DNA of 64,000 nucleotides from NCBI RefSeq assembly GCF_006345805.1, contig NC_042998.1:70928001-70992000 (forward strand). The letters run 5' to 3'. Shown here piece by piece: positions 5,401 to 37,310 of the stretch (positions are counted from its first letter, which is position 1; each line of letters opens with the position of its first letter). Origin of the DNA: Octopus sinensis. Its lineage: Eukaryota. The notes beneath the pieces were generated by a model. It saw nothing but the letters and a program-made list of their open reading frames with translations. It made no database searches and was not told where the DNA came from. The position numbers and the translations under genes are program-made.

Positions 5401-5867
5401 CTCAGTAATCCGCGTTGAAATCTATTTTATATTTCTGTGTATTTTCAATAAGATGATCTAGAAGAGGAAAATGTTTATGTGACTCAAGGAAATTCACTCA
5501 ACTTGAATAAAAGAAAGATATAGCTTTTAACTTAATTGTTTTAGTGATTTAACGAAATCCCCGCATGGTGCCCGTTTGAAATATCAAGATAAATTCTTGG
5601 TTTCGGCAACAATTTCATTATATCGTTAATATTCATTTAAGTAAATGAAATCTATATCTTTCGAATCTTGCCTCTCGATTCGAAATATCTACGCAATTTT
5701 ATTATTTTTATCCAGTGAAAGACATTTAAAATTATATTTTTGACTTCAGAAGTCAAGGTTTCGCTTTACTAAACAGGTAGATAACAACACTGAGAAATGA
5801 GTATTTTCTGAATAACAAATAAATAAGTTCTCTTGTGTCTGGGGAGATTCATTTTCTTTTTGTGCCC

Positions 5868-7011
5868 TATAATATAACACACTCACCGGTAAAATTTCCA
5901 CTTTTTTCTCATTTTTATTTTCCTAAAATTTTCGTTGCGTCTTCCAACCTTTTCAATAGTTTTGACTCTGTCCGCTTTTTACACTGCGTTCCCTTTTGTT
6001 TGTTTGTGCGCATGTGTGTGTGCCTATACATGCATGCATGTATAGGCACACAGATCACAATTATGTAGGATATACCCCTGGCATTAACTGTTGAACTCGA
6101 AATGTAGTTTACAGCATAAGATGCATAGAAGGTGAACATGACGTACATAGAGGAAACATCTAGGTGCATTGCGGAACAAATAAATGAACATCTAAGACAA
6201 TATGACGTCAGGAAACAGTCCTCCATACTCTACCAACATACCAAAGACCACCATGGAGGTAACTTGGATCAACTTGACATCCGCATCTTATCCAAGCACC
6301 GAAAAGACCCAACACTCAGACAAATACGGGAGTACGTCCTTATAAATGAAACCTCTCCAATACTAAATAGGAAATATACATAGTAACTACCATACCTCCA
6401 TACCCACAGTTTACACAGGTAGAGGAGAATAGTTAGTGGACTGTTAGGTAGATAAATGTATGTAAGTGTGTGTGGATGTGAGTGTGTGTGTATGACCCCC
6501 CTTTAAAAAAAAATTATTATTATTATTTTTTTTTATGTATGTAAGCATGAAAATAAACAGATCAACATACAGACGGATAGGTACATAGGCTATAAGAACA
6601 GACACATATGGAGACACATATTCACACATATAAAGATGCACATCGATACATAGAAACATGGTACATTGTTGCATAACACACACACAGACAGACATGCACA
6701 CACAAGGACGCAGAGCTGCATACATATACAAACACATGCTCACACACACATACATACATACATATGCATACACACACATATATACATACATACACATGCA
6801 AACACACACAATCATACATACGTACATGTATGCATGTATAGGCACACACACACACTGACCCACACACATGCGTACAAACAAACAAACAAAAAGGAACGCA
6901 TTGTAAATAACGGACAGAGTCAAAACTATTGAAAAGGTTGCAAGACGCAACGAAAATTTTAGGAAAATACAAATAAGAAAAAAGTGGAAATTTACCGGTG
7001 AGTGTGTTATA
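5868..7011. mobile_element. Foldback/TIR element with ~170-bp imperfect inverted arms (5868-~6040 vs ~6840-7011; terminus resumes at 7395)
   Basis: tataatataacacactcaccggtaaaatttcc... at the left end is the reverse complement of ...ggaaatttaccggtgagtgtgttata|ttata at the right end. Confidence 0.7.
6101..6383 (+). pseudogene. Penelope-like element GIY-YIG endonuclease fragment (frameshifted)
   Basis: NVVYSIRC (6101) / TYIEETSRCIAEQINEH...SILYQH...R...E..I..TSPILNR matches the PLE GIY-YIG pattern VVY..C..C..YIG.T.R....R..EH....LN. Confidence 0.8.
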
Positions 7012-7394
7012 TCTTTATATATAAAAGTAAGGTTGTGTGCTGTCTGTCTCCTACGATTTAGATTCCTAACTACTGCCACATTTTGCGGTGCAGTTTAACC
7101 AAAACCGGGTATCTTATAGTCGTGATTCATATCGAGCCCTTCTGGGTATTAGCGCGCGTCTACGATGTGTCTACGATTTAAAAAAAAAATTACCATTTTA
7201 ATGCATTTTCGGCATATATAAGGGAAGTAACTCTCTAAAAATGTATTATTAAATCTCAGAACGTAAAAAGCCACAGTAACCCCCCACCCTTTGTGGTTAG
7301 CCATATTGAGATGGCTATTATACTTTACATCTCTAAAACTGCTTATATAGTTATTTCCCTTACAAACCCGAGCAACGCCGGGCGATACTGCTAG
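7012..7394 (+). mobile_element. Non-autonomous Helitron (383 bp)
   Basis: 5' TC and 3' CTAG termini, subterminal hairpin CCCG-agcaacgc-CGGG (7367-7382), inserted between A and T without TSD; removing it restores the TIR terminus gtgtgttata-ttata. Confidence 0.85.
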
Positions 7395-8260
7395 TTATAA
7401 TATAAAAAGAAAATGACTCAACGGACACAACAGAATATGCTTCAACACACGAACTCATATAAAGAATCTTGCAAACCAAATCCAAAAACGAAAAATAAAT
7501 AAGTATATAAATAAATAAATAAATGAATAAAGAGTTAAAATAAATAAAGAGTTAAAATTGCCAGCATAATATTTATTCTGATGGTAGAGCTATTATGAAA
7601 ACATATCAGAATAATTCCCATGACAAATAACTGAAGTGTTGATCTAGTTATTCTTTGACCCAGTAGACCTATGATAAAAGATATTCCAGCGTTAATCATG
7701 CCTTCATTTATTCAGGCATAATATATTGAAGAGAATAGGTTAGTATTTGGCTGGCAATATTTGTGGCTCTCCTTTTGGGTTTTACAGTTATAAGAAGTAG
7801 AATGTAACACGTCTCGCGTCCTTTGATAGAGGTGAACTTAGAAATGTGTAAGAAGGTTGCATGCAGAGCTGAGAAGTGTATCGAAATGTGATAAAATATT
7901 GGTGTTAGAGAACTAATGTCACTAGCTTAGATGAAAAGGAGAACGAAGTGAAATAATGACATTAGAATGAAGGATCAATGTAGTTGTAAAGTAATAAGAA
8001 ATGTATATATGTATGCATTGACGAAAGTGATAAACGCTGGAGACAAATTTGGGTGCGTAGAAGTAGGAACAGAATATATATTTAATTATTAATGTACTAA
8101 ACAACGTGTCGTCAATACTATGAAATTTGCATCAGGTTATAACTTTGTACAAATATTTAACTCGCTGTGATGTGAAATTGGTCCTCCTGGACAAAAAAAA
8201 TGTTATGTTTGTTCTCTCTGCATACACTCAGTGTATTTTCCAATATAATGTGTCTGTGAT

Positions 8261-8333
<73 letters not shown>

Positions 8334-8430
8334 TTAATCCAAACAAGAAAACACAAAGAGAAAACACAACAACGCGAGGACGTGGAACAAGTATAGTGTT
8401 ATTGGACGCTCAGAAAAGAAAAAAGAAGGA

Positions 8431-8461
<31 letters not shown>

Positions 8462-8692
8462 GTGTGTGTACATACAAATATACACGAAAGATCTACTTAC
8501 AAAAGTACAGTCGCATAACAGAGTGTAATATCATCACGGAAGAAGGATCAAAGAATTACAAATAAGAGAGCGTATAGTTCAGTTTTGAATATACCAAGTG
8601 TTGATTGGAAAATAACTCAGTAAGCGAAAATCATTGGAGGGACTAAAAGATACGCTAATAGTTTATAAGTGACTCAGTACGATATATTACAA

Positions 8693-8728
<36 letters not shown>

Positions 8729-9430
8729 AGCAAACAAACTTATAGTAATGGTTTCGATTCTCATCATGTGTTGTATATTTCAATGGACGCTATGATTCAT
8801 TGTCCGAGTGCAGTGACAAAGTCATTACATACAAATATCCGATATTTTATACGTCAAATAAAATAAAAATTGATAAAGAAGAGATATGATTTTCTAATGA
8901 GATTTCCGGTTGATTGACTCGCTGTCAATGAAGATTGAATGAAGTTTCTATAGGTTGTTAGTGAGTGACAGCTAATAACTCTACTTTCGGACATTGAGAA
9001 ATTTAGATTAATGTTTTAGGGAGACAATAATACATTTTAAGACGGTGATGGTAGCAAGTATTTGGAGTGCGGTATACATTTTAGGATGAACCTATTTCAG
9101 AAGTTCTTATAATTGAGTGATAAAAAACATAAACTTTTCACATAAATTTCTCTTCATAAAATATCTCTGATGTCATTTTTATGTAAATGTTAGAAAAGGC
9201 AAGAGGTGACCACAGAAAAGGATAGTTTCAATAAATACCTTTACATAAAAGCCTATGAAGATACTGCCACAAAACTAGTAGATCATTAATACTTCTCTGT
9301 GGAGGTAAGGCAGAATATTCCTATATTCACTACCCTCAAACATCTCTGCCTGTAAACATTCGGTGAAACTCTACATAGCTTACCGGCTGCTATTTCTAGC
9401 AAAGATCGTATTTTGTGTCCATTAGCTATG

Positions 9431-9483
<53 letters not shown>

Positions 9484-9534
9484 GCATATATTTATTTATT
9501 CATATTCAGAGAGAGGGAGAGAGAAAGAGAGAGG

Positions 9535-9602
<68 letters not shown>

Positions 9603-10323
9603 GAGTGAGTGAGTGAGAGAGGCGGGGAGAAAGGTATTTAGAATTAGATTAAAAAATAGTGGAGAACCTTTGATGAAACAGAACAAGTCAGGTGAGTCAC
9701 AATTATTTTTCTGCGCAGCTAAGAAAACAATAGGACGATTTTGCACTGTTTTAATCTTCACAAGTAGGGCTTTCAAGAATAACCACAGATACACACACAT
9801 ATATATGCACACATCACACAAACAGAAAAAAATTGCACATACAAAGCTATATATGTTTGTATGTATATGCATTTGATTGTGTATATGGGTATGATTAACA
9901 CACAAGTCTATCAGTTAAGGAGGAGATAAATAAACAAATAATACATGACGATATATAATAGAAATAGAGGACTGAAAAAATATGTAAAGTTGAAAAAAAA
10001 ACCCAGAAACAATGGAAGTAAATAAGTACGCCAATGAAGAAACAAGAGAATAACTGATCAGAAAGGAGTAGGGGGACGAAACAAAGACAAACCGAGAAAG
10101 CGATTGACGAGAAAAATAGAGGGAGTGAATTGGTATATATATATATATATAATATATATATATATATATACATATATACATACACACATATATATATATA
10201 CAAAGACTCTTTCTATTCCTGAGCGTTATACTAATACATCTGTTTGTTTTGTACACCACCTGTCTTCGTCTTTTGTTTTTTCGTAAACTCTCCCTATATA
10301 TACATATATATATATAAATCAAT

Positions 10324-12540: not shown

Positions 12541-14149
12541 CGAGTGTGTATGATTGTGTATAGAATATATTACTTAAAGAAATTCCAAGTTTGATGTTCA
12601 CGTTTTATTTACAACCTTATAATAATGTAATATAATATAATATATAATATAATATAATATGATATAATATAGTATAATATAATGAAATGATAGAATATTA
12701 AATGTCCGTTCTAGAATTTTCATGCATTACACTATGCAATCTTCAGGTTCATGTAGCAGTGGTGACAGTTATGTTTTACTATTTACAACTGTAGTGAGAT
12801 GGCTTACGGTACACAGTTTAGCCATCTCACTACAGCTTTATATAAAGAGTATATATATTCTGATCAAATATTCCATGTGTTAACATGTACCTTTGTGCCA
12901 CAATGTAAACTCTCATTTAATCAAGATACCCTTGATCTGAAGAGTAGACGCTGATGTACACCACACTTGGATATTTACCACTTACTGAGGTTCCGTTGGT
13001 TATGAAACACATGTAGCCCGGATCTTATCTACTCCATTCCTTAACGCTTGTATTTTTATTCACATACCCGGCAAACCTGGTCGCCTACCGTGATATATAA
13101 AAAAGAGCATTTTCCTGTTTATCGTACTTCGATATGAAAAGCTTCTGTGAATAAATCACTGTTGTGTCTGAAAGTTGTTTTTTATATTTATTACGGATTA
13201 CTTGAATATATATATAAGTGTGTACACACACACCACACACACATATACACACATATCTCTAGAGAGAACAGCATAGGGGAATACAACAGAAGCAAAAATG
13301 TAGATTAGAGCATTAAATACATCGAGTGTTTTAGGTTGCTTTTTAATATACAGATATCTACACGCTTATTTAAACAATAATAATTCTCTTTCCGCCCAAT
13401 CGCAACTGCCACGCTGTCCTCAAATACAATCTTTATTTCTCCCCCACAAATCCGAAGGGATATTAACTACGAATAATCATTTCAATATAAGAAATCAGCC
13501 TCAAAACCTGAAGCCTACCGTCCCCAATAATCGTAGCAGTATAAAAATTATCTCTCGTTCACTTGCAAGAACTGTAGGGCTAAATATATCGCATCAATCC
13601 CAACACTAACTATACAAACATATTCTATAATATGTTCTATAATGCTAACTTAATTGAAAACAGGTTTAGCAAGCACAATCATTCTTCACAGTTTTACAAC
13701 TGAAAATCTGATCTCTTATAACGGATTATGTTTGGTTACTCTAGTACTCTAGTAACGCCTTTAACTGGGGAATATTTCCTTTTGCTAAATCCTATTTCAG
13801 TACCACAATCTATGTCAGCTGTGTATATCCGAGTCTTTGTGATATTCCTCTCCTGTCTAATTCTGTTTAACATACAACCCAAGCCATAATCTGCAACCAA
13901 ACCGAAAGTATCCCAAACCAATTACATTACTAAATATGGAGTTCAGAAGCAACTTAATAAATTGAAGACAACTGGAATCTACGGCCAGCAACAAATCTTT
14001 GTACAGCACTTTCCTGGTTACAGTATTATTTACAATGTAACACTATTCTCTTATTTAATGAATAAAGTAATCAGCATAGTATGAAATATTGTCAGTATAA
14101 AATTAGGTACGCATTTACATTCGGGGACAAGCAAACGCCGCCAACATAC

Positions 14150-20384: not shown

Positions 20385-21975
20385 AAATAAATGCTAGTTG
20401 AGAACTAGGGCCAATGTCATCGACTTGCCCCTTGTCACAAAATCTGAGGCATTGTACTTATCGCGGAAAAGATTACTGTTCATGTAGTGGCGTGGCAGGA
20501 TCGTTATCATGCCGGACAAAATGATTAGCAACATTACTCCTGTTCTTAGCTCACATGCCGCGTTTTACCCTTCAGGAGGCCAGAAAATAAGCCTCAGTTG
20601 AAACTGTGTACGATATAACAAACTTACTCTTTCCTTTAAAGATTACTGTTACGGCTCATTACACTCTACGTGCAAATTCTGCTGAGGTCTCCTCTGCCTC
20701 TCATACTTAGACCGTTGATAAAAGAATTACCAGTTGAGTACTGAGGGCGTGTACCAATGTAAAATGAATTTGAGTTATTAATATGACGACCTGGGAAAAC
20801 CGTTAGCATCTCACACAATGCTTTAGCATTCTTTGCAGCCGTTCAAACTCCGCTGATGTCAGTTTTACCGTTTACCATTTTGTAGATAAAATAAAGTATA
20901 ACTCGAATACTGGAGTCTATGTAATCGAAATGCCGCCTCGCCCTAAAACTGCTGGCCTTGTGCCAACACATAAAAACCATTATTACTATTAATTTCATAT
21001 CGTTCCGTGTCAATATAAATGTGCTTTTTTTTTACTTGTCTAAGTCTAGAATTACAACCAATTTATACTGTTAGATACTATTATTATAATCAGTCTATAC
21101 TGTTGGCTAACATTACAATTATTATTACTAAGGCGGCGAGCCGACGAATTGCTTACTGGTATTTCGCCCGTCGCTACGTTCTGAGTTCAAATTCCGGCGA
21201 GGTCGGATTTACCGTTCATCCTTTCGGTGTTGATAAAGTAAGTACCAGTTGAGTACTGGGGTCGATGTAATCGACTATCCCCCTCCTCCAAATTTCAGGC
21301 CTTGTGCCTATAATAGAAAAGATTACTATTAAGGTGGCAAGCTGGCAGAATCGTTAGCCCGGTGGACGAAATGTTTTCGCCAATCGTTACATTCTGAGTT
21401 CAAATTCCACCGAGGTCGACATTGCTTTCATCCTTTCGGAGTCAATAAAATAAATACTAGTTGAACACAAGGGTCGATGTAAATGACATATCGCCTCCCC
21501 CAGAATCGTTGTCCTTGTGGCAAAGTTTGAAACATTATTATTTTTAGTAAGGCGGCGAACTGGCAGAATCGTTAGCACACCATGCAAAATGCTTAGCCGC
21601 ATTTCGTCTGCCCTTACGTTCAGAGCTCAAATACCGCCGAGGTCGACTTTACCCTTTTACCTGTTGATCGTTGATGTCGATCGACTTATCCTTACCACAA
21701 AACTACTTATCGACTTATCCCTACCACAAAACTACCGGCCAAAATTTAAAAACATCATTATTGTTACTAAGGTTGTGAACTATCAGAACAGTAAGCACGC
21801 CAGGCAAAATACTTAGCGGCATTTCGTCCGTCTTTACGGTCTGAGTTCAAATGCCATTTGCCTTTCACCCTTTCGGTGTCGATAAAATAGATACCAGTTA
21901 AACACTGGAATCAATGAAATCGACTTATTCCTTCCCCGAAATTGCTGACATTGAGCCAAAATTTGTAACCAACAT
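20385..21975 (+). mobile_element. Head-to-tail cluster of ~7-8 tRNA-derived SINE family 2 copies
   Basis: Repeated ~200-bp unit ggcggcgagctggcagaatcgttagc...ctgagttcaaat...gtcgatgtaatcgac...(att)n at 21130, 21331, 21548 and 21768, plus older copies upstream. Confidence 0.8.
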
Positions 21976-24900: not shown

Positions 24901-25084
24901 TCAGATTCCACCGAGATCGACTTTGCTTTTCTCAATCGACTGGAGCTATATGAGCCCCGGTTTCGATTTCTTAGTCATATCTACTTTTTAAAATTGCTGT
25001 CTTTGAGCCAAAATTTGAATTCATCATCGTGTTCATCATCTGATGCTAATAATAATTATTATAATAGTCATTTCTACTATAGGC

Positions 25085-25296
25085 ACAATGCCTGAAATTG
25101 GGGCAGGGGAATAGTCGATTATATCGACTCCAGTCGATACCAGTCGACTGGTACCTTTTCCTCGACCCCGAAAAGATGAAAGGCAAAAGAGACCTTGGTG
25201 GAATATGAACTCAGTACGTAAAGACGGACGAAATAACGCGAAGCATTTTTTCCGGCATGCTAACGATTCTATCATCTCGCCGCCCAAACAATAAGA

Positions 25297-25363
<67 letters not shown>

Positions 25364-25548
25364 ATAATTATAATGGCTTCAAATTTTGCCACAAGGGCAG
25401 CAGTTTTGGGGGAGAGGATGAATCGATTACACTGAAGCCGGTGTTCAGCTAGTACTTTTTTTTAACGCCCCCGAAATGATGAAAGGGAAAGTTGACCTCG
25501 GTGGAATTTGAACTCAGAACTTAGCGACGGGTGAAATGCTGCTAAGCC
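25085..25548 (-). mobile_element. Two SINE family 2 copies separated by a (CTA)n(ATA)n tail
   Basis: Reverse complement of the family 2 consensus; the copy at ~25375-25548 truncates Gag-like unit E. Confidence 0.75.
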
Positions 25549-27159
25549 CACTCGACTCCCGAAGTCGAGTGGTTGCATTTAGACGTTATTTTCTGAACAG
25601 TTTTTTTTTCCTTTTAAAGGTTCACATCTACATTTTTAAATATTCATATTTTACAATATTTTAAAATCTTCAAGAGTTTATGTTGAATAATCGGTGGGAA
25701 GGTATCAAACCCCATCGGTCCGCCAATTGAAATTATATACTTTGCATGTTTTTATAAACGTGTTGTATCTGTCTTCGTTCAATAATACACACTTTTATCC
25801 ATCCGTGAAATCCTCCATGGGTAGTTTCCTCCTTATTAAACCCTTCCACTTGCAAATCCTCTTTTCCACGTCCACATTCTTACCGTAGTAAACTACAAAT
25901 GCCTTATTTTTCCAAACCTGCTGTTTCAGTCCCTTCTGCCGATTCCCACTCCTTTTGTCCTGTTTCAATCGTCTGCATGTTTTTAAATATAGGCAGTTCC
26001 TTACCTTCTTAGAGCGTCTGATCCGGTTCGGCTGCTGGTCTTTCAGAGTTTACCTTTGTTGTCACCTTTTTCCTCTTTTTGGGGATGACAAACCCGTCAC
26101 TCCCCTTACTTGTCACTTTCGTTCTGCCTTTCTTTGACTCCACCTCTTCCGTATCCCTGGATACGGAAGAGGTGTCACTTGGTACTTTGGTCTCAACTGC
26201 TTCTAGGTCACTCTCCACAGCTTTCTCATTCTGAGGATGCTTGTACTTGGGGCACTGCGTCTTCATATGGTTTCTTATTCCACACTCATAGCAATTTGGT
26301 CTTCGTCCCTCAAAAATCCCGGAATCTCTATCTGGTAGGGGTCACTTTCGATGTCCTTGAAAGTGTCTAAAAGACACATCTCGACCCCGTGCCTCCACCA
26401 GTTCAACTTGATCGCTTTTCCCACTGACACTATTTCGAAATACTCCTCGGTGGTAGCCATAACAGCTGCTACCAACCTCTCTGGCTTTATTTCTGGTTGC
26501 ACCCTTCCAATACGAATGCGTACACTTCGGCTTCCCCTGTATGTGGGCAATAGCGTCATCTTTTCACTGCATAAAATAGTATGGAATGTGAGGCAACCTC
26601 TTCTTTTTCGCAAACCTCATTACCACCGTATCATATTTTTTCATCGGCTAACGTAAGTTGCCGTTTTCAAAAGGGATTCCAAACATGCCTCCACGTCACC
26701 CTTCCATAGATTCTCAGTTTTATTGGTGGCGACCGCTTGCGTGCGGTACACCACCGTCCTATCACTCTTATCCTCGGCCGTTTCTGCTGGAGGTACTAGC
26801 TTTATTGTGTCTCTCTCCTTTCGTATATATTGTTCACTCCTTCATATTTCCTCCTTATTCACTATTATCTGTTTTAGGTCCAACGACAGAGCTGCTCCTA
26901 CTGCAGCGATTTTTGCGTAGAAATCACCGTTTTCCATATTGAAAAACGAACTTTTCATCCTCACAATGAGAAGAAAACAGCAAAAAACTCACGCGCGAGT
27001 CGCTCAACGATAATCTTCAACAGTGATACACAACAAATTCTTCAACATCGGACAGTCTCGAAGAGAAAGCCTTCAACATGCAACAACAATCCAAAACCGT
27101 AGTCAAGAATGACGAACCTCAGAACCCAAACAAACAAGTTGTTAGTCTGCAACACCAAC
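25549..27159 (-). pseudogene. Gag/ORF1-like unit E (subfamily 2), decayed
   Basis: ATG at 26937 (MENGDFYAKIAA...); LLPTYRGSRSVRIRIGRVQPEI; knuckle CYECGIRNHMKTQC at 26252-26293; FVIPKKRKKV; C-terminal GFDTFPPII; stops and frameshifts. Confidence 0.75.
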
Positions 27160-27466
27160 GCCCTAATCTTTCTGTTACCCACCAAGTGGCGAACACAGAG
27201 GGGACAATACATCACATGTGGAGACACAAAGCATGGAAAAAATAAGAGAACGTATAAAAAACATGTAATGACAAGATGAAAATGAAAAATGTAATGAAGC
27301 CACTCGGTCCCACCTCTGAGCAGCTTTCATTTATACCTTTAATTCCTTTTATATCCTGTTCCCTACAAAATATCTATCCCGTGTTCTTTCAACATTTCCT
27401 CAAAAGTCACTAAGCCTGGCATTCCATTCCATTCCTATCCAGTTTCATCTCTGAGACGACAGCAAT
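27160..27466 (-). mobile_element. 3' remnant (unit X) of a further Gag-like unit
   Basis: Hairpin, pyrimidine tract and ...aacagaaagattagggc|gttggtgttg junction colinear with the other unit ends. Confidence 0.5.
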
Positions 27467-29188
27467 ATCCTGATTTCTTTTATTAGGTGCAAGGCCTCGA
27501 TAAAGATGGGACAACAAAAAAACAGACAAAACAATACAATGGGGTGCATAAAAACATATCGAATGAAATATGGGTACAATGAAAAATGAGGATGGAATAA
27601 CTTACCTGCCCCCCCCCCATAAGCAGGTAGTTTCACTTTACTGTTTTTAAATTAAGTTTTACTTAACAGTCCAATATCCTGTCTTGCATTTGTTGGTTTT
27701 CCTTTTTTTTCTAAGAAAGCAAAGTCACTAATTACACCATATATTCCAATATATTTTCGAATGCCACCACCGGCGGCAACTCATCGTAACGAAACTGTAT
27801 ATTGTCACATCTATTCTTTCCCCAAACAACTCCTTAAATCTTTCTAATCTTTCTCTTTCCAGCAGGATAGCTTTCATACCTTCATTGTACTCCTTGGGCG
27901 CCAATTTAATTCTAATTACGTTCTTTATCTTTGCAATCTTTTTTTCTATCTCTTCACTTTTTCTGTATTAAATCATATGTCTTAGATTTTTCCCTTTTGG
28001 TGTCACTCTTTGTTTTCTTTTACCAATCTCTTCTTCTGTTACTGGTATTCCTATCTCTGTATGTCTCATTCTCTCCTTCATTTTCCTTTTTTTTTCTTCT
28101 GTACTCTCTCCTGCTTGCTTGACCTTTCTTTTTTTTTTCTCTGCTCGTTCGTTTTTTCATGTTTTCCACTCTGCATCTCCTCTCCACTTGCCTTTCTTTT
28201 CTTCCTAAGACTCTTTGGTGGTGAGTTTGTGTTATTTCTTTCCTCTTTACCACTGTATACTGCTCTTCCATTTTTCCTCCTCTACGGTTAAACCCCTATT
28301 CTTCTTGATGTCCCTTCTCTATCTCCTCCTCTTCGTGTTTCTGGGGACACATGGCTTACAGATAGCATACAGGAGGTCTTCCTCTCACCACAATTCTCAA
28401 CCTCGTCTCGTCCGGTAGTATCAATTCTTCTGCAATTTTGCGGAGGTCTTATAAGCTTATATGAACCGATACCTCCGGTACATACCCACTCAGTTCACCT
28501 CCGTAGTTCTCTGTGTTATAAAGAATGGCCACGCCACGTAATGTCTGGGGGCACTCTACAATCCTTACTCTGGCCGCACGTTTGTCACAGTAGATTGGTA
28601 GTAGCAGCCCCTCAGTTGATCTCAAAGGCACAGTGGAGTGTTTTATCGTTTCTTCCTCACTCACGAAGCGTACCTCCACTGTGCTATATTACTTTTCTCT
28701 GGTGTAAAATGTTGTTAGCTCTTAAACTTCTTTTAAGCATTCTGCAACCGCCTCCACTCCTGCTATTTCCACTTTTATTGTTGTAAGGGACAACGTTCTA
28801 TATATTATTGTTTGTTTTTTCTCTGTTTATTTTCTACGACTTCTTTAGGCGGAGTCAGCCTCAGTCTCTCTCCTTCCTTTCTCACAAATTCGTTATACTT
28901 TTTGAAATTAGTTTCGTTTAGTTCAATTTCTCTAACTTGTAGTATATATGCTGTTAAACTCTTGCCAGTTACTGCACCGTGACTGCCTGCTAGTACTTGT
29001 TTTCTTTCGATAATATTATCTACAACTTCACCCATAAATGGGGAAGAAAAATTAAAATTCGAGCAACAATTCAGTAATATAACACTTTAACAATAACAAT
29101 GTAACATTAACAGACTCACGTGGAGCGAATACACATCAACTAAAACAGGAGTAAAATGACTCGGCACAACATTAAGGACAACACAACC
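27467..29188 (-). pseudogene. Gag/ORF1-like unit D (subfamily 1), decayed
   Basis: QVREIELNETNFKKYNEFVRKEGERLRLTPPKEVVE; EVRFVSEEE; GRPPVCYL with knuckle partly deleted; C-terminal GMKAILLERER...FRYDELPP...MV* (stop 27732-27734); 3' UTR with AATAAA. Confidence 0.75.
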
Positions 29189-30460
29189 GTCCTGATTTCT
29201 TTTATTAGGTACAAGGTTTCTATAAAGTAGGGACAACACAGAAACAGTCAAAACAGTATAATGGGGTACATAAAAACACGTATCGAATGAATTATGGATA
29301 TAATAAAAAATGAGGATGGAATAGCTTACCCCCCCATAAGCAGGTAGTTCCGGATTTCATTGGTTAAAATTCGAAGAATTAAACTACGTAAAAGTTACAA
29401 AATGCAATTTTCTCAAAAAAACTAATTGAAATTAATATTTTCTTTTGATACATTCTACCAGTATACGAAGTTTCAAATTATTTAGTTGAGTTGAAATTCT
29501 GTCCATCTTTTAGTAAAGATCCGGCAGTTCCATTTTACTCTTTTTCTTCTCTCCTCACCAATCCCCTCCTCTGTTGCTAGCATTTCTATCTCATTCTGTG
29601 TTGCTATCATCTCTCTTTCATTTTCCTTTGTCTTCTGTACTATATCCTCCTTGCTAGTTGATGGTCTCTGCGTTCGTTCCTCACTTTTGTTGACCTTTCA
29701 TTTTTTTCTCATCACATTCGTATTCTCTTCTTTTTAACTCTGCGTCTCCTCTCCACTTGCCTTTCTTTTCTTCCTAGGACTTTTTGGTGGTGAGTCTGTA
29801 TTACTTTTCCTCCTTTGTATCACAGTGTACTGTTCTTCCATTTGTTCCTCCTCAACGGTTGCACGCTCTTCTTCCTGATATTCCTTCTCTGTCTCTTTAT
29901 CTTCGTGTTTCTGGGGGCACTTAGCTTTCATGTGTCCCCTTACTCCACACAGAAAGCATACAGGTGGTCTTCCTTCCACCACTATTCTCAACTTTGTTTC
30001 GACTGGCAGTATCAGTTCTTCCGCAATCTTGTGGAGGACTGGCAAGCTTATATGAACTAATACCTCCAGTCCAAATCCTCATTTTCAATATTTGGGTGTC
30101 CTCCTCTGTATTATAGAGGATGGCTGCCATCAGCTGCGCCTCATCAATTTCTGGAGGCACTCTACCTATTCTTACACTGGCCGCACGTTTGCCACAGTAA
30201 GTCGGTAGTAGCGCTCACTTCACCGATCTCAAAGGCAAAATGGAGTACTTTCTCGCTTCTTCCCTACCCGCGAAGTGCACCTCCACTGTGCCGTACTTAT
30301 TTCCTCTGGTGTAGTACGTCGTTGAATCTTTAATCCCTCTCAAACACTCCTCAACCGCCTCCACTGCTGCTATTTTCACTTTTTAGTTGCAATATTTAGC
30401 TTTCTAAATATCATGGTACTTCTCTCTGTTTTTTCTATGACTTCCTTAGGATTTAAATTC
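29189..30460 (-). pseudogene. Gag/ORF1-like unit C (subfamily 1), 5'-truncated
   Basis: YYTRGNKYGTVEVHF; VPPEIDEAQL; knuckle CFLCGVRGHMKAKC at 29917-29958; SPRKKRK; shared 3' UTR 29189-29351. Confidence 0.75.
29352..29522. mobile_element. 171-bp insertion with 9-bp TSD (Mutator-like MITE?)
   Basis: Flanked by ggtagttcc (29343-29351) and ggcagttcc (29523-29531); termini GGAT.../...ATCC; absent from the homologous position in units A and D. Confidence 0.5.
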
Positions 30461-31547
30461 CTCCTCACCTTTCTGTGTCTCCTTCTTAGTTTCCATAGAC
30501 TTTTTCTTGCTTTTGCCTTCTTCCTTTTGGGGCTGATAAAATCATGACTCCCCTCTTTCACTTCATTCCTTTTCTTTATGTTGCTGACTCGCTCACTATC
30601 ACGTCTATCTTTTTTCTTTTCTTACTCTTGTTCCTCCTCTTTCTCATATAGCATAAATTCCGCCAAGGGGCATTGAGCCTTCATATAGCCCTGTGCTCCA
30701 CAAATGTAGCAATTGGGCCGTCTTCCATCTACTACTACACCTAGCCTTCCTCCTTCAATCTCAATCTGGTAGGGGATTTGCGCAATGTCTTTGACGCCGA
30801 ATCCCCACTAGCTGTTTTTGTTTGTCACTCCTACTTGACCCAGTTCAGGGCCGTCTTCGGTTGCCGCCAAAACTGCTGCAACCAACCACTTGGTCTTGAT
30901 TTCTGGTGGCACTCTTGGGATTCTCACTCTCACACTTCTACTTCCCTTGTGAGAGGGAAACAGCATACCTTGGTTCGTCTTCAAGATGTTGGTGGCATGC
31001 GAAGCCGCTTCTTACTTGGTAGCAAACCTTACCTCCAAAGTACCGAACTTTCTACTTCTGCCAATGAACTCTGTTTCTTCTACTATGTCGGCCAAACACT
31101 CCTCAATATCCTCATCCACAGTTTGTCAATTTTATTGATGGCGACCGCCAGCGTGCGGCACATCACCGTCTTCTCCTCCTTCTCCTTCATTGTCTTTTGC
31201 GGAGACACTAACTTGATGGTGTCTCCTTCCTTTTTCATCAGTTTCTCATTCTTCCTCACCTCCTCCATATTAACCGTTATTGCTGACACTTCCATTTGCG
31301 GTGTCGCCTTTGCCGCAGCGGCCTTTGCGTAGCTCGCCATAACACGGCTACTTTAAGATCACCAAAAATAGCAGCAAACTACACGCGCGATAACAATGAT
31401 TCAACAAAGTTCAACAATAAATTCACGTACTTCACAACAATTCTCAACTCTCAAGACAGTAAAAACCAAGGTGTTCAAAGAATACAACAAAATATCACAC
31501 TTCTTCAACAACAGATGACTCGATACGACACTAACAACAACACCAAT
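30461..31547 (-). pseudogene. Gag/ORF1-like unit B (subfamily 2), 3'-truncated
   Basis: ATG at 31340 (MASYAKAAA); RKFGTLEVRFATK; LFPSHKGSRSVRVRIPRVPPEI; knuckle CYICGAQGYMKAQC at 30670-30711 (His to Tyr); FISPKRKK. Confidence 0.75.
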
Positions 31548-33367
31548 GTCCTGATTTATTTAATTAGGCACAAGGCCTCATAGAGAAGGGACAGCACAAA
31601 AGACAGACAAAACAATACATTGGCGTACATAAAAACATATAACGAATGAATTATGAATATAAATGAAAATGAAGATGGAATGACTTACTTGCCCCCCCCC
31701 CCATAAGCAAATAGTTTCATTTTACTGTTTTTGAATAAAGTGCGTACTTATCAGTCTTGTATCTTGTTAGATTTCCTTTTGTTTAAAAAGCTACACAAAG
31801 TCACACCATATGTTTCGTCAAATCGTCAAATATTATCCATGGTGGCAATTCATCGTAACGAAATCGATTTCTTGTTATCACTATTCTATCACCAAATATT
31901 TCCTGCAACCTTCTTGCTCTTTCTTCCTCCAACAGCACCGCTTTCTCATCTCGATTGTGCTCACTGTCAGCCACTTTTAACCATTATTACATGTTTCATT
32001 TTCGATATTTTCTTTCCTATCTCTACAGATTTTTGTAACTTATAATAGTACTTTCGTATTTGCTCTTCTGTGGCTCTCTTTGCTTTTCCTCACCACTCTC
32101 TTCTTCTGTTGCTGGTATTCCCGTCACTGTTTGTCCTTCCTTCTCACTTTCATGTCTCTTCTTTTTCCGTCCTTCCCCCTCCTTACTAGGTGAAGGCAAC
32201 GGTCTTTGTGTTCGTTCCTCACTTGTCTCCTCATTCCTTCTTTTCCCATTCTTGTTCTTCTCTGCCTTTCTTTTCTTCTTCGGGCCTTTAGGTGGAGATT
32301 CTCCAATACTCCTCTTTCTTTCTGCCATTGTTTATTTTCCAACCATTTCCTCGTCAACCGCTGTTGCATCCTCTTCTTCCTGACGCTCCTTCTCCGCCTC
32401 CTCCTGTTCGTGTTTCTGGGGGACACTTTGCTTTCATGTGTCCCCTTACTCCACATAAATAACATACCGGAGGTTTCCCTTGCACCACGATTCTCAACCT
32501 TGTCCCATCTGGTAGCACCAGCTCTTCCACAATTTTGTTGAGGTCCGGCAGGCTGATATGGACCGACACCGCCAGTCCATATCCCCAGCAGTTCCTTTCC
32601 GTCGTTCTTGATATCTTCAATACCTGAGTGCCTTCCTCTGTGTTATAGAGGATGGGTTCCACCAGCAACGCCTCATCAATTTCTGGGGGCACTCTACCTA
32701 TTCTTATTCTTGTCGCACGTTTGCCTCAGTAAGTAGGTAGCAGTGCCCACTCGGCTGATCTCAAATACACAGTGGAGTATTTCCTCGCTTCTTCTTCGTT
32801 TACGAAGCGTACTTCCACTGTCCTGTATTTCTTTCCTCTCGTGTAATATGTCGTTATGTCAACTATCTTTTGTAGACATTCCTCTACAGCCTCCCTCGCT
32901 TCAATTTTTGCGTTGCTACATTCAACTTTCTATAAAAAATTATCTTTTTTTCCGTTTTTTCAAGTATTTCTTTAGGGGACGTCAACCTCAGGTTGCCCCT
33001 CTCTTTCTTTAGCCAACCGTTATATTTTTAAAAATTCTTTAATTCGATTTCTTGAACCTGCAGTACCTCTACTGATAGGCCTTTGTTAGCCACCGCAGCG
33101 TAACTGCCCGCTGGTTTACTTTCCATGACGATATTATTCATAACTTCAACCATAAATGAGGAAGAAAAATAAAAGCCAGTTAACAACAAAAATTTCAACA
33201 ATTCCAGTTAATAACAGTTCAAAAATTCAGTAAATTAACAATACAATACAACAAAAATCCCATGGAGCGAACACACTGCTAACACAGCTCCGAATCAAAT
33301 GATTCGAAAAACAACACTGACGACAACGCCGACATTCTTTAAACGATTAGCCGAATACAACACCAAC
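31548..33367 (-). pseudogene. Gag/ORF1-like unit A (subfamily 1), full length but decayed
   Basis: ATG at 33126 (MESKPAGSYAAVA); YYTRGKKYRTVEVRFVNEEEA; knuckle CYLCGVRGHMKAKC at 32423-32464; PKKKRK; FRYDELPP...MV* (stop 31801-31803); shared 3' UTR 31548-31730. Confidence 0.8.
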
Positions 33368-34079
33368 GTCCTCTCAGTGACTAACCAGGGATGATTTTTA
33401 AAATGAGAATATCTGAAATAAACTTGACTGTTCTCACAAACGAGAATATTAAAAATGAACCCGACCTCTCTCAAAAATTATGTAAAAAAAAACCTTGTCC
33501 GCTACCCAATCGATCCCAATGGTCCTCATTGAATGTGGGTGTACGGGCCGTGTTTGTAATGCTGTGTGTGTGTCATCTGCAATGGGAACAGAGACAGTTT
33601 TCTCTATGAAGGCCTTTTTTTTTAGTTTAAGTGTCTTTACGACCATTAAAGTCTATAGTGGAAAATTTATCCGTGCGTGAAAAAAAAACGGAAAGACCTG
33701 CGTACGGTGCTGTTAACGGAGGTTTATCAACATCGTTGCGCACAAAAACGAGAGTCCAAGACGTAAAGCGTCCTTCAAGGCAGAACTAGAAATGCAATTG
33801 TCTAGTAGGTAAGTGGTTTTAAACATGAGCCATATATTTAAAATTGGTAAAACTAAAACCTGTCGAGAATATATTAAATATATCAGTGTTACTGAATATT
33901 ATAGTGTTATTTAATTTCTGAACGGTTTTGCTGCCGTTTGTTTATATAGTTTGATTTCTTTATCCATCAGTTTCTACTAAGATAGAGATGTGAGTAAAAA
34001 TCAATAATAGAGAAGCGAAAATAAAACTTTAGGTACAGCAATGCCACCATAAATTACGTGGAAACCATGAGCGTGCTTT

Positions 34080-34351
34080 CTGGGGTGATAATCAGAGAAA
34101 GACTTGAAAGTCAACGTAAGATCGTAATACTGCATGTAAAGTAAATATAACAACTAATCCAGAATTCTTCTCCGATACCGGATCGATCCCAAAATATAAT
34201 CGGTTCGTGCTAGTCACAGGACCAAACATCCCTGAAAGTTCCATCCGAATCCATCCAGCGGTTCTTGAGATATCTTGTCCACGGAGAAACAAACACTCAA
34301 ACAAACAAATACGACTGAAACGATACCTCCACCTTCGCTAAGGTAGAGGTA
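34080..34351 (-). mobile_element. Short non-autonomous element with terminal hairpin and (GTTT)n (Helentron/DINE-like?)
   Basis: Hairpin tacctc-c-acctt-cgct-aaggt-a-gaggta at 34324-34351 with adjacent (AAAC)n; class assignment is inference. Confidence 0.35.
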
Positions 34352-34483
34352 CTACTACTACTACTGCTACTGCTACTGCTGCTGCTGCTGCTACTACTAC
34401 TACTACTACTACTATTACTACTACTAATAATAATAATCATAATAATCATAATAATAATAATTATAATTATAATCATAATAATA

Positions 34484-35150
34484 ATGTACCACCCGAAGGC
34501 TGATATAGAACGAATTTATCTGCCAAGAAACGAGGGAGTCCGTGGACTTTTACAACTGGAATTAACAATGAGGTTTGCCACAAATGGCGTAGACAGTCAC
34601 CTGAAAAACTTTGATGACTGGATGTTAAAACATATCTTAAAGCATGAATACAAGGAAGCATCACATTCCGTAACAAAAGAGGCAAAGGAATATCTAAGTG
34701 AATTCCAAAGAACGGCAGTAGCCCAACATGTCGTGTATGTCAACAAGAAAATGAAACCATTGATCATGTTGTCTCCGTGTGCAGTCTTTTGCTCCTATAG
34801 AGTATCTCAACATCTTAATAAAACAGCACAATATATTCACTGGGTAATTTGCAAAAACCTGGACCTGCCCCGTGATAAAACTGGTGGGGAACACAAAATA
34901 CCCCCTGTGCTTGAAAATCATCACATCTCACTCCTCTGGATCTTCACCATTCAAAATGACAGAAAGATGAATGCGAATAGGCCAGACATTATATTGAAAG
35001 ACTTCAGATAAAAACCATGATCCCTCATTGATATGACTGTCCCAATCGATATAAATGCCCCTGTCAAATTCTATCAAAAACTTAGCAAGTATAAAGATCT
35101 TGAAATAAAAATTGGTAAAATGTGGAACAGCAAAACTAAAACAATACCTG
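34484..35150 (+). pseudogene. C-terminal fragment of an RLE-type (R4/Dong-like) non-LTR retrotransposon ORF
   Basis: HPKADIERIYLPRNEGVRGL; alternate-frame CRVCQQENETIDHVVSVC (CX2CX8HX4C); AQYIHWVICK; ANRPDIILKD...IDMTVP...KLSKYKDL (PD-D/ExK endonuclease); internal deletion and stops. Confidence 0.85.
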
Positions 35151-36477: not shown

Positions 36478-36582
36478 ATATGTGTATGTATATATATATT
36501 ATGTATATGTATGTATATACGTATATATATATATATATATATATGTATATGTATATATGTATATACGTATATATATATATTA

Positions 36583-36634
<52 letters not shown>

Positions 36635-36823
36635 CGTATATATATATATGATATATATATATAATGTAGTATATATGTATGTATGTATATATATGTATAT
36701 ATGTATGTATATATACGTATATATATATATATATATATTATGTATGTATATGTATGTATATACGTATATATATATATGTATGTATATATATATGTATATA
36801 ATATATATGTATGTATGTATATA

Positions 36824-36856
<33 letters not shown>

Positions 36857-36959
36857 ATGTATGTATATGTATGTATATACGTATATATATATATGTATGT
36901 ATATATGTATGTATATATATGTGTATATATACATATATATATATATATGTATGTATATA

Positions 36960-37008
<49 letters not shown>

Positions 37009-37275
37009 ATGTATGTATGTATATATGTATATATGTATGTATGTATATATGTATGTATGTATGTGTATATATATATATGTGTATATATATATATGTGTAT
37101 ATATATGTATATATATATATATATATATTATGTATATGTAGTATGTATATATGTATATATGTATGTATGTATGTATATATGTATATATGTATGTGTATAT
37201 ATATATATATGTGTATATTATATATATATATATGGTATATATATGTATATATATACCTATATATATATATATATG

Positions 37276-37310
<35 letters not shown>
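36478..37310. repeat. ~830-bp (TA)/(TATG) compound microsatellite
   Basis: Directly visible; source of the 321-, 288- and 245-aa Y/I-rich ORFs. Confidence 0.95.

What the first reader, a model, noticed from the sequence alone, without database searches (positions are those of the whole stretch)
25549..33367. Head-to-tail array of divergent Gag/ORF1-only elements with no reverse transcriptase
Seen: at least five co-oriented minus-strand units (A, B, C, D, E plus remnant X), 1.7-1.8 kb when complete. Each has a 5' UTR, then one ORF (SYA..A start, GT.EVRF..EEA and L.PTY.G.R...VRI.RVPPEI blocks, CX2CX4HX4C knuckle, E/K-rich linker with a PKK(R/K)K motif, conserved FRYDELPP-type C-terminus), then a ~260-nt 3' UTR with AATAAA. 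The next unit follows immediately, with no APE/RT ORF and no poly(A). Two clearly diverged subfamilies alternate (GRPPVC: A, C, D; GRRPNC: B, E), so this is not a simple recent tandem duplication. Established: RRM plus CCHC architecture is typical of L1/Tx1-type ORF1p; Gag-only head-to-tail arrays are known from Drosophila HeT-A; ZCCHC3 is a related host gene. Inference: a non-autonomous ORF1-encoding retroelement family that accumulates serially at one site, or a decayed tandem family of domesticated ORF1 genes.
Basis: partly seen in the sequence, partly recalled or inferred. Interest (0 to 1): 0.8.

Follow-up and report, generated by a model that had tools for sequence, protein, structure and literature searches.

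The report
Decayed array of ORF1-only "half-LINE" retroelements
This octopus-like DNA holds five dead, head-to-tail copies of a retrotransposon that keeps only its RNA-binding ORF1 gene and has lost its reverse transcriptase; that is a known kind of genomic parasite, seen here in a new animal group and in an unusual arrangement.

Summary
Five co-oriented minus-strand units and a doubtful remnant fill 33367-25580. Complete units are 1.72-1.82 kb, and all reading frames are broken.

The units are ORF1-only derivatives of an L1/Tx1-like LINE family of octopods. In four other loci, homologous ORF1s sit directly upstream of an endonuclease/reverse-transcriptase ORF2. One of these, in O. vulgaris, is intact. 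Closer relatives lack ORF2 and occur singly, one of them with a target-site duplication.

The units, the full LINEs and the local SINEs share a 3' hairpin (loop CUUGU) that is supported by covariation. Units diverged under purifying selection (dN/dS 0.17-0.42, dS 0.7 or more). U2 is closer to an O. bimaculoides copy than to U5. The array is therefore not a recent tandem duplication.

Every junction, and the flank before the first unit, carries AGGAC or a one-base variant. The same pentamer marks a tandem array of intact full-length LINEs in O. vulgaris.

Best reading (inferred): repeated insertion, using a partner LINE's enzymes, at one regenerated AGGAC site, followed by decay. The closest known cases are HAL1 (ORF1-only), HeT-A (arrays) and double-insertion tandems. 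This is a new variant of a known kind, of moderate interest.

The parts
33368..33372 (-). AGGAC pentamer between the unrelated upstream flank and the 5' start of U1 (GTTGGTGTTG...)
   Evidence: The 973 nt upstream (33368-34340) show no similarity to any unit.
31553..33367 (-). U1, a complete ORF1-only unit, P-type (GKPPVC). CDS about 33153-31804, broken by at least 3 stops and at least 4 frameshifts. 3' UTR about 250 nt.
31560..31579 (-). U1 3' box GAGGCCTTGTGCCTAATTAA, a 4-bp hairpin with a CUUGU loop, followed by AATAAATC
31548..31552 (-). AGGAC at the U1|U2 junction
30454..31547 (-). U2, N-type (GRRPNC). Has a 5' UTR and an ORF from MASYAKAAAAK. It breaks off in the basic linker (KRKKAKARKS) and is fused to U3.
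   Evidence: It is 60% identical in the core to O. bimaculoides P0003 but 42% to U5.
29194..30453 (-). U3, P-type (GRPPVC). Starts inside the ORF at about residue 58. The C-terminal region is replaced by an unrelated repeat at 29502-29377. The 3' UTR is intact.
29189..29193 (-). AGGAC at the U3|U4 junction
27472..29188 (-). U4, a complete P-type unit (GRPPVC). CDS about 29035-27735, with several stops and frameshifts.
27467..27471 (-). AGGAT at the U4|X junction
27165..27466 (-). X, a possible internally deleted remnant. It has a unit-like 5' start (ATTGCTGTCG) and a loosely 3'-UTR-like end.
   Evidence: MAFFT alignment only. Not significant by BLAST.
27160..27164 (-). AGGGC at the X|U5 junction, followed by GTTGGTGTTG
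25580..27159 (-). U5, N-type (GRRPNC). ORF about 26925-25647, heavily broken. The C-terminus FDTFPPIIQHKLL is kept. The 3' UTR is lost, and the unit is followed by two SINEs.
   Evidence: 67% DNA identity to U2 over 387 nt.

Best explanation
The region is a graveyard of ORF1-only ("half-LINE") retroelements.

What each unit is. Each unit descends from an L1/Tx1-like LINE family of octopods. It keeps the 5' UTR and ORF1. ORF1 comprises a long helix, two RRM-like alpha/beta modules, one CCHC knuckle, a basic E/K linker and a conserved C-terminal domain. The unit also keeps the family's 3' UTR, which ends in a small hairpin (NNNC-CUUGU-GNNN) followed by AATAAA(A)GAAAT. It lacks ORF2 (endonuclease and reverse transcriptase) altogether.

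How it moves (inferred). Such elements cannot copy themselves. Their RNA would be recognised through the shared 3' hairpin by the ORF2 protein of an autonomous partner, such as the intact element in O. vulgaris locus L013. The partner would copy the RNA into the chromosome by target-primed reverse transcription. The abundant local SINEs carry the same hairpin, so they would use the same machinery.

How the array formed (inferred). Members of at least three diverged ORF1-only lineages (U1/U3/U4, U2 and U5) inserted one after another at the same AGGAC target. Each insertion leaves an AGGAC on both sides, so the site is regenerated and the next copy lands exactly head-to-tail, with no tail between copies. 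A later deletion fused U2 to U3. An unrelated repeat entered U3. SINEs replaced the 3' end of U5. All copies then decayed.

Shown: the anatomy, the homology to LINE ORF1, the absence of ORF2, the shared 3' hairpin, selection during divergence, and the AGGAC pattern.

Inferred: mobilisation by a partner's enzymes, and repeated use of one site.
For: 1. Family size. A profile of the unit cores finds 728 representative proteins (223 at E<=1e-10), from O. bimaculoides, O. sinensis, O. vulgaris, Argonauta hians, unnamed read sets and one marine metagenome.

2. Relatives with ORF2.
- L013 has an ORF1 of 470 aa overlapping an intact ORF2 of 1132 aa. That ORF2 scores above the Pfam cut-offs for Exo_endo_phos, RVT_1 and zf-RVT, and aligns with human LINE-1 ORF2p over residues 3-868 at E=2e-71.
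- L014 (Argonauta) has ORF1 plus ORF2 with a perfect 16-bp target-site duplication.
- L001 and L002 have the same layout.

3. Relatives without ORF2. L004 and L005 have no co-oriented ORF2 within 10 kb. The L005 copy is 1.73 kb and is flanked by a 17-18-bp imperfect direct repeat.

4. Tree. In a neighbour-joining tree, every member of known context in the units' half lacks ORF2, and every one in the other half has it.

5. Shared 3' end. In the hairpin, 87% of cells are paired against 62% in shuffles. Seventeen cells carry changes on both sides, and 0 of 500 shuffles reach that. Slid controls pair at 25-45%.

6. Selection. dN/dS is 0.17 (U1-U3), 0.25 (U1-U4), 0.42 (U3-U4) and 0.32 (U2-U5), with dS 0.7-1.4. 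The terminal 165-200 nt of the 3' UTR are 78-84% identical, against 42-55% identity at synonymous sites.

7. Lineages. U2 is 60% identical to P0003 but 42% identical to U5.

8. Junctions. AGGAC, AGGAT or AGGGC lies at all five boundaries, including flank|U1. In L013, AGGAC lies at each junction and at the end of the unique flank before the first unit.

9. Fold. The AlphaFold2 model of the U1 core has pLDDT 90. The best PDB matches are RRM and tandem-RRM proteins.

10. Published mechanism. Double insertion at one site, which preserves the target in the junction, is a described route to tandem retroelement arrays (PMC5932611).
Against: - No 3'-most junction with unique DNA is visible. U5 has lost its end, and L013 runs into an assembly gap. 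AGGAC therefore cannot be shown to be a duplication rather than part of the element's own 3' end.
- Two insertions of the family, L014 and L005, have other flanking repeats, so the target is a preference at most.
- U1, U3 and U4 group together among the sampled sequences, so some local duplication cannot be excluded.
- The L013 array is 99-100% identical. That is easier to explain by unequal exchange, and it shows this route exists in the family.
- The fold matches are weak (no Foldseek E<=0.001), and there is no direct match to solved L1 ORF1p.
- dN/dS was computed only on in-frame, alignable pieces, which biases it downwards.
Confidence: 0.6

Rival explanations
1. One or two insertions were followed by local tandem duplication or unequal crossing-over. 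The array grew at the DNA level and the copies then diverged in place.
For: All junctions are in register. U1, U3 and U4 are each other's closest relatives among the sampled sequences. A tandem array of full-length relatives that is 99-100% identical (L013) shows that recent expansion at the DNA level, or homogenisation, does happen in this family.
Against: dN/dS of 0.17-0.42 at dS of 0.7 or more means most of the divergence accrued while the ORFs were under selection, not in dead copies. U2 and U5 belong to different lineages; U2 is 60% identical to an O. bimaculoides protein and 42% to U5. The order P-N-P-P-(X)-N does not fit a duplicated dimer whose partners are equally diverged.
Confidence: 0.22
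2. A single integration event produced a concatemer. The reverse transcriptase jumped from the 5' end of one template RNA to the 3' end of another, joining RNAs of different family members in one cDNA.
For: The junctions have no tail and join different lineages end to start. Template jumping is known for non-LTR reverse transcriptases (R2; from my own knowledge).
Against: Jumping gives no reason for an AGGAC at every junction and at the outer flank. Nothing here shows that all units are the same age. Rolling-circle copying of one template is excluded by the different lineages.
Confidence: 0.1
3. The region is a former cluster of host genes domesticated from ORF1, of the L1TD1 or ZCCHC3 kind, that later degenerated.
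For: dN/dS below 1 between units. Some relatives elsewhere have intact ORFs and are annotated as genes (P0008, P0027, P0003).
Against: All five copies are dead and two are truncated. The units keep the LINE/SINE 3' hairpin and terminus, which are more conserved than synonymous sites. There are hundreds of scattered, mostly fragmentary relatives. One solitary copy has a flanking duplication.
Confidence: 0.05

Closest known systems
HAL1 ("half-L1") of mammals
   Same: A non-autonomous LINE derivative that encodes only ORF1p and depends on a partner's ORF2p. HAL1 has arisen more than once (PMC5753468). Here too, ORF1 and the LINE 3' end are kept and ORF2 is absent.
   Different: HAL1 derives from mammalian L1, whose ORF1p has a coiled coil, RRM and CTD and no zinc knuckle. 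It ends in poly(A) and is dispersed. The octopod elements have an ORF1 with RRM-like modules plus CCHC and no poly(A). They end in a hairpin followed by AATAAAGAAAT. They appear to form one old, diversified clade (neighbour-joining tree only) and here lie head to tail.
HeT-A of Drosophila telomeres
   Same: A Gag/ORF1-only element, dependent on another element's reverse transcriptase, found in head-to-tail arrays with 5'-truncated members.
   Different: HeT-A belongs to the Jockey clade, sits at chromosome ends and has oligo(A) at its junctions. Here the partner is L1-like. No telomeric repeats are present. Ordinary repeats flank both sides, and the junctions carry AGGAC without a tail.
Tandem retroelements made by double insertion at one target site (R1 arrays; McGurk and Barbash 2018)
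   Same: The target sequence is preserved in every tandem junction. Junctions that involve truncated copies are explained by insertion or by later deletion (PMC5932611).
   Different: Those cases involve copies of one family, usually dimers that later expand. Here at least three diverged lineages of a non-autonomous element share one site, and the presumed target is only 5 bp long.
LINE-SINE pairs that share a 3' stem-loop (the stringent type, e.g. eel UnaL2/UnaSINE1; from my own knowledge)
   Same: The autonomous LINE, the SINEs and the ORF1-only units share a covarying 3' hairpin next to the 3' terminus.
   Different: Recognition of the hairpin was not tested here. The 3' ends differ among sub-lineages: (ATT)n in L001 and the SINEs, none in L014 and L005, and AGGAC in L013 and the window.

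Membership tests
ORF1 protein of a non-LTR (LINE) retrotransposon, the type with RRM plus CCHC | Homologues lie directly upstream of an APE-RT ORF2 in autonomous elements | tested here: met
   L013, L014, L001 and L002. The profile E-value for the most distant ORF1 (P0099) is 1.7e-15.
ORF1 protein of a non-LTR (LINE) retrotransposon, the type with RRM plus CCHC | CCHC zinc knuckle | tested here: met
   CX2CX4HX4C is present in U1, U2, U3 and U5. Pfam zf-CCHC is above its cut-off in P0003 and P0099, and just below it in the broken U1.
ORF1 protein of a non-LTR (LINE) retrotransposon, the type with RRM plus CCHC | RRM fold | tested here: inconclusive
   The model has pLDDT 90. The top PDB matches are RRM and tandem-RRM proteins (TAP, Pub1, UP1, HuD) with probability 0.9-1.0, but E is 0.007-0.06 and TM 0.3-0.4. 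There is no match to L1 ORF1p.
HAL1-like ORF1-only non-autonomous LINE derivative | Encodes ORF1 only, with no endonuclease or reverse transcriptase | tested here: met
   The unit length of 1.7-1.8 kb is filled by the UTRs and ORF1. No ORF2 similarity is found. The same holds in L004 and L005.
HAL1-like ORF1-only non-autonomous LINE derivative | Shares its 3' end with an autonomous partner | tested here: met
   The hairpin plus AATAAAGAAAT terminus is shared with the L001, L013 and L014 LINEs. The AGGAC end is shared with L013.
HAL1-like ORF1-only non-autonomous LINE derivative | Dispersed copies with target-site duplications and 5' truncations | tested here: inconclusive
   Solitary copies exist in L003, L004 and L005. 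L005 has a 17-18-bp imperfect repeat. L004 has odd 65-75-nt repeats and lacks the 3' box. U3 lacks its 5' end. Too few loci were examined.
HAL1-like ORF1-only non-autonomous LINE derivative | Mobilised by the partner's ORF2 protein | not testable with these tools
   Needs a retrotransposition assay.
HeT-A-type telomeric Gag-only arrays | Located at chromosome ends and built by end addition | tested here: not met
   There are no (TTAGGG)n repeats in the 64-kb window. SINEs, a foreign LINE fragment and unique DNA flank both sides.
HeT-A-type telomeric Gag-only arrays | Jockey-clade origin | tested here: not met
   The partner ORF2 is co-linear with human L1 ORF2p (E=2e-71) and has a zf-RVT domain. 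No formal RT phylogeny was made.
Domesticated ORF1 gene (L1TD1 or ZCCHC3 kind) | Intact ORF kept at a fixed locus | tested here: not met
   All five ORFs carry stops and frameshifts. Synteny could not be tested.
Strictly site-specific LINE (Tx1-clade or R1/R2 type) | The same target sequence at every insertion | tested here: inconclusive
   AGGAC is present at the window array and at L013. L014 and L005 have other flanking repeats, and L001 lies between (ATT)n runs.

The most novel reading that the evidence does not exclude
This sub-lineage of octopod LINEs, together with an old ORF1-only parasite of it kept under purifying selection, integrates preferentially at the AGGAC junction left by earlier copies. 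If so, it actively builds internal, non-telomeric head-to-tail arrays, which would be a self-seeding route from retrotransposon to tandem repeat. The ORF1-only clade would be a long-lived third partner in a LINE / half-LINE / SINE system that shares one 3' hairpin.
Probability: 0.3. Interest if true: 0.6.

Novelty: new variant of a known kind. Interest (0 to 1): 0.42.

Why it matters
ORF1-only LINE derivatives are well known only from mammals (HAL1) and from Drosophila telomeres (HeT-A). An old, diversified ORF1-only clade in cephalopods would show that keeping ORF1 while borrowing a reverse transcriptase is a recurrent and stable parasitic strategy.

The locus also bears on how tandem repeats arise from retrotransposons. 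It combines an intact autonomous partner, abundant SINEs with the same 3' hairpin, and arrays whose junctions preserve a 5-bp site. Octopus genomes are repeat-rich, and LINE activity in them has attracted interest. A defined LINE / half-LINE / SINE trio would help annotation, because many family members are currently called as "uncharacterized protein" genes.

Tried and rejected
- The word-indexed protein searches returned only 1-3 hits, because the E/K-rich linker swamped candidate selection. The exhaustive profile search was the one that worked.
- Genomic look-ups failed for proteins held only in UniRef: P0001, P0052 and P0071. As a result, a gene model that seems to span two units elsewhere (P0052) and the probable O. 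bimaculoides counterparts of U1 and U2 (P0019, P0003) could not be placed.
- A sequence search of the PDB found only retroviral CCHC knuckles.
- Pfam gives nothing beyond zf-CCHC for ORF1.
- I first read the (TAC)n(TAA)n runs at 25297-25374 and 34350-34485 as a duplicated target of the array. They are rejected: the first is the tail of a SINE, and the second lies 1 kb from U1 next to an unrelated LINE fragment.
- I considered that the repeat flanking L005 was a terminal redundancy rather than a target-site duplication. The perfect 16-bp duplication around the Argonauta LINE, which has the same 3' terminus, makes a duplication the simpler reading.
- The read-set contigs L006-L011 did not reveal transcript ends.
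- X and the 973 nt upstream of U1 show no significant similarity to the units.
- Rolling-circle amplification of one template is rejected, because adjacent units belong to different lineages.


Full report
**1. Observation**

The window is AT-rich eukaryotic DNA (about 35% G+C). It holds abundant microsatellites and tRNA-like SINEs. Every protein relative found comes from octopods, apart from unnamed read sets and one marine metagenome.

On the minus strand between 33367 and about 25580 there are five co-oriented copies of one element and a doubtful remnant:
- U1: 33367-31553.
- U2: 31547-30454.
- U3: 30453-29194.
- U4: 29188-27472.
- X: 27466-27165.
- U5: 27159 to about 25580.

Complete units are 1820 nt (U1) and 1722 nt (U4).
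- an N-terminal SYA..A motif;
- GT.EVRF;
- LLPTY.G.R..RI.RVPPEI;
- one CX2CX4HX4C knuckle;
- an E/K-rich linker with PKKKRK-type motifs;
- an FRYDELPP-type C-terminus.

Two sequence types occur. U1, U3 and U4 read G(K/R)PPVC. U2 and U5 read GRRPNC.

Further damage:
- U2 breaks off in its linker and is fused to U3, which starts at about residue 58.
- U3 has an unrelated repeat at 29502-29377. That repeat also occurs in L001 and L004.
- U5 has lost its 3' UTR and abuts two SINEs.
- X is not significantly similar to the units by BLAST.

No ORF2-like sequence exists in any frame (phmmer at E<=10). An intact ORF2 used as a tblastn query finds nothing in the whole window.

**2. What the ORF is**

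A profile of the unit cores was searched exhaustively against 1.84 billion representative proteins. It found 728 proteins at E<=0.001 and 223 at E<=1e-10. Those with names are from Octopus bimaculoides, O. sinensis, O. vulgaris and Argonauta hians.

Genomic context was decisive. Four loci carry a homologous ORF1 directly upstream of ORF2:
- **L013 (O. vulgaris).** A 470-aa ORF1 with the same core, knuckle, basic linker and C-terminal motif overlaps an intact 1132-aa ORF2. That ORF2 scores above the Pfam cut-offs for the endonuclease, RVT_1 and zf-RVT domains. It is co-linear with human LINE-1 ORF2p over residues 3-868 (E=2e-71), whereas R2 proteins match only the RT core.
- **L014 (Argonauta).** ORF1 plus ORF2.
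- **L001 (O. sinensis).** An intact 615-aa ORF1 with a damaged ORF2.
- **L002 (a marine-metagenome contig).** The same layout.

The ORF is therefore a LINE ORF1 of an L1/Tx1-like family. The clade was not placed by phylogeny.

An AlphaFold2 model of the U1 core is confident (pLDDT 90, pTM 0.78). It shows a long helix and two alpha/beta modules before the knuckle. Its best PDB matches are RRM and tandem-RRM proteins. Their E-values are weak and none is L1 ORF1p. I call the RRM assignment likely, not proven.

**3. ORF1-only is a property of a lineage, not of this locus**

Closer relatives in O. vulgaris (L004 and L005) have no co-oriented ORF2 within 10 kb. L003 in O. bimaculoides also shows none, but a 2.1-kb assembly gap follows its ORF.

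In a neighbour-joining tree of the core, all members of known context fall into two halves. The half with the window units (U1-U5, P0013, P0027, P0031) lacks ORF2. The other half (P0007, P0012, P0065, P0099) has it. This suggests one old ORF1-only clade. The tree has no support values, so this remains a lead.

The L005 copy is 1.73 kb, the same size as the window units. It is flanked by CTGGGTTCG(G/T)CTA(G)CTCT. The Argonauta full-length element ends in the same terminus (...CCCTTGTGGCGAATAAAGAAATG) and has a perfect 16-bp duplication, TCTTCAACTTATGTTT. The L005 repeat is therefore best read as a target-site duplication.

**4. Shared 3' end**

The units end ...TGTCCC.TCT....GAGGCCTTGTGCCTAATAAAAGAAATC. 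The same box is found in several places:
- in the 3' UTR of L005;
- at the 3' end of the full LINEs in L001, L013 and L014;
- at the 3' end of the tRNA-like SINEs that litter the window.

GGCCTTGTGCC with up to one mismatch occurs 9 times in the window, against 0.24 expected. Most of these hits are at SINE or unit ends.

The box folds into a 4-bp hairpin with a CUUGU loop. This was tested across 19 ends from LINEs, ORF1-only elements and SINEs:
- 87% of cells pair, against 62% in shuffles.
- 17 cells carry changes on both sides (GC/CG and AU/UA swaps).
- 0 of 500 shuffles reach these values.
- Slid controls pair at 25-45%.

The sequences are related, so this is supportive rather than conclusive. 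It is the pattern expected for a 3' signal recognised by the family's reverse transcriptase.

After the box the sub-lineages differ:
- (ATT)n in L001 and the SINEs;
- nothing in L014 and L005;
- a short extension ending in AGGAC in L013 and the window.

**5. How the units diverged**

On in-frame alignable parts (159-216 codons), Nei-Gojobori estimates are as follows:

| Pair | dN/dS | dS |
|---|---|---|
| U1-U3 | 0.17 | 1.0 |
| U1-U4 | 0.25 | 1.1 |
| U3-U4 | 0.42 | 0.7 |
| U2-U5 | 0.32 | 1.4 |

Between the two types, synonymous sites are saturated. The terminal 165-200 nt of the 3' UTR are 78-84% identical, while synonymous sites are only 42-55% identical. ORF1 and the 3' end were therefore both under purifying selection while these lineages separated. 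That cannot have happened in dead copies lying side by side.

U2 is 60% identical in the core to O. bimaculoides P0003 but only 42% identical to U5. At least three source lineages are represented. An old duplication followed by neutral decay is also disfavoured.

**6. The junctions**

All five boundaries carry a pentamer followed by a 5' start of the type (G/A)TTGGTGTTG:
- flank|U1: AGGAC.
- U1|U2: AGGAC.
- U3|U4: AGGAC.
- U4|X: AGGAT.
- X|U5: AGGGC.

The flank upstream of U1 is unrelated to the units.

L013 is an independent case. At least three full-length LINEs stand head to tail there with a period of 5279-5284 bp and 99-100% identity. Each junction reads ...ACTGATA-AGGAC-GTTACTTTGAC. The unique DNA before the first unit ends in ...CGACAGGAC.

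The family-level 3' terminus seen in L014 and L005 stops before this pentamer. AGGAC therefore behaves like target sequence kept at each junction.

That is the signature described for tandem elements formed by repeated insertion at one site, where the target is preserved in the junction. In that account, junctions between truncated copies arise from 5' truncation or from later deletions across junctions (McGurk and Barbash 2018, PMC5932611). The U2|U3 fusion fits the deletion case.

I cannot see the 3'-most junction with unique DNA in either array. AGGAC could therefore be the element's own last five bases, pairing with an AGGAC target during priming. Either reading predicts a preference for AGGAC sites, and earlier copies supply such sites.

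The head-to-tail SINE cluster at 20841-21971 has short ATT-type tails at its junctions. L001 is flanked by (ATT)n runs. Both show the same habit of inserting at the ends of earlier copies in the (ATT)n sub-lineage.

**7. Mechanism and rivals**

Best explanation: the units are non-autonomous half-LINEs. They were mobilised by an L013-type partner through the shared 3' hairpin and inserted repeatedly at one regenerated AGGAC site. They were later damaged by a deletion, a foreign insertion and SINEs, and are now all dead.

My confidence that the units are ORF1-only LINE derivatives is about 0.9. My confidence that repeated insertion built the array is about 0.55-0.6.

Rivals:
- Expansion at the DNA level after one or two insertions (0.22). 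The young L013 array shows that this happens in the family.
- A template-jump concatemer formed in one event (0.1).
- A degenerated cluster of domesticated genes (0.05).

**8. Comparison with known systems**

The closest in kind is HAL1, the ORF1-only L1 derivative of mammals (PMC5753468). The closest in arrangement is HeT-A. However, there are no telomeric repeats here and the partner is L1-like, so HeT-A is an analogy only. The array mechanism matches the double-insertion model.

What differs from all three:
- an ORF1 with RRM-like modules plus CCHC;
- junctions with no tail;
- a 5-bp junction site shared with an intact autonomous relative that also forms arrays;
- several old ORF1-only lineages stacked at one internal site.

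I rate this a new variant of a known kind and moderately interesting.

**9. Limits**

- Only seven informative outside loci could be fetched.
- No octopus genome could be searched by DNA, so copy numbers, the target preference and synteny are untested.
- The ZCCHC3 link was not tested.
- The species of the window is not identified. It is not O. bimaculoides, whose closest proteins are only 60-65% identical to U1 and U2.

Noticed in passing
window 20841-21971 (+): At least five tRNA-like SINE copies stand head to tail, with only short ATT-type tails between them. The SINE 3' ends carry the same CCTTGTG hairpin as the LINE family and the ORF1-only units.
   Followed up: partly
window 25075-25580 (-): Two SINE copies with (TTA)n(GTA)n tails lie directly after U5 and replace its 3' UTR. 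The microsatellite at 25297-25374 is a SINE tail, not a target duplication of the array.
   Followed up: yes
window 34350-35011 (+): A (TAC)n(TAA)n run is followed at once by a 175-aa ORF (MYHPKADIERIYLPRNEG...). It looks like the C-terminal part of the ORF2 of a different LINE. It has no Pfam hit and no similarity to the L013 ORF2.
   Followed up: partly
window 60000-60269 (+) and 59474 (-): A further short ORF1 fragment of the same family lies on the plus strand (33% identity to P0007). About 0.5 kb away, on the minus strand, lies a family-type 3' end (CCCCTTGTGGGTAATAAAGAAAT). How the two relate is not resolved.
   Followed up: partly
window 29377-29502 (-); L001 9113-9332; L004 11931-12038: A repeat of about 125 nt replaces the C-terminal coding part of U3. 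The same repeat occurs as an inverted pair in L001 and once in L004. It is probably a small non-autonomous element.
   Followed up: no
L013 4450-19184 (O. vulgaris OX597840.1): A tandem array of at least three full-length LINEs with a period of about 5.28 kb and 99-100% identity. ORF1 (470 aa) and ORF2 (1132 aa) are open in the unit examined (4450-9722). The elements look young and possibly active. An A28 run sits in the 5' UTR 30 nt before the ATG.
   Followed up: partly
L004 9716-9790 and 11716-11780 (O. vulgaris OX597815.1): A solitary ORF1-only copy is flanked by direct repeats of 65-75 nt and lacks the last 60 nt or so of the family 3' UTR, including the hairpin. Ordinary target-primed insertion does not explain this.
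   Followed up: no
L001 13308-13481 versus 13922-14092 (O. sinensis): The ORF2 of this LINE copy contains an inverted duplicate of part of its own RT region and is split into three ORFs, while its ORF1 (615 aa) is intact. NCBI annotates the ORF1 as a spliced gene, LOC118765946.
   Followed up: partly
window 36485-37308: A (TA)n microsatellite of about 0.8 kb creates several spurious long ORFs on both strands.
   Followed up: no
proteins P0051, P0136, P0012: Public gene models fuse ORF1-family fragments to host genes (WD40, LDL-receptor class A) or name them "EPM2A-interacting 1-like". This suggests the family is widely mis-annotated in octopus gene sets.
   Followed up: no
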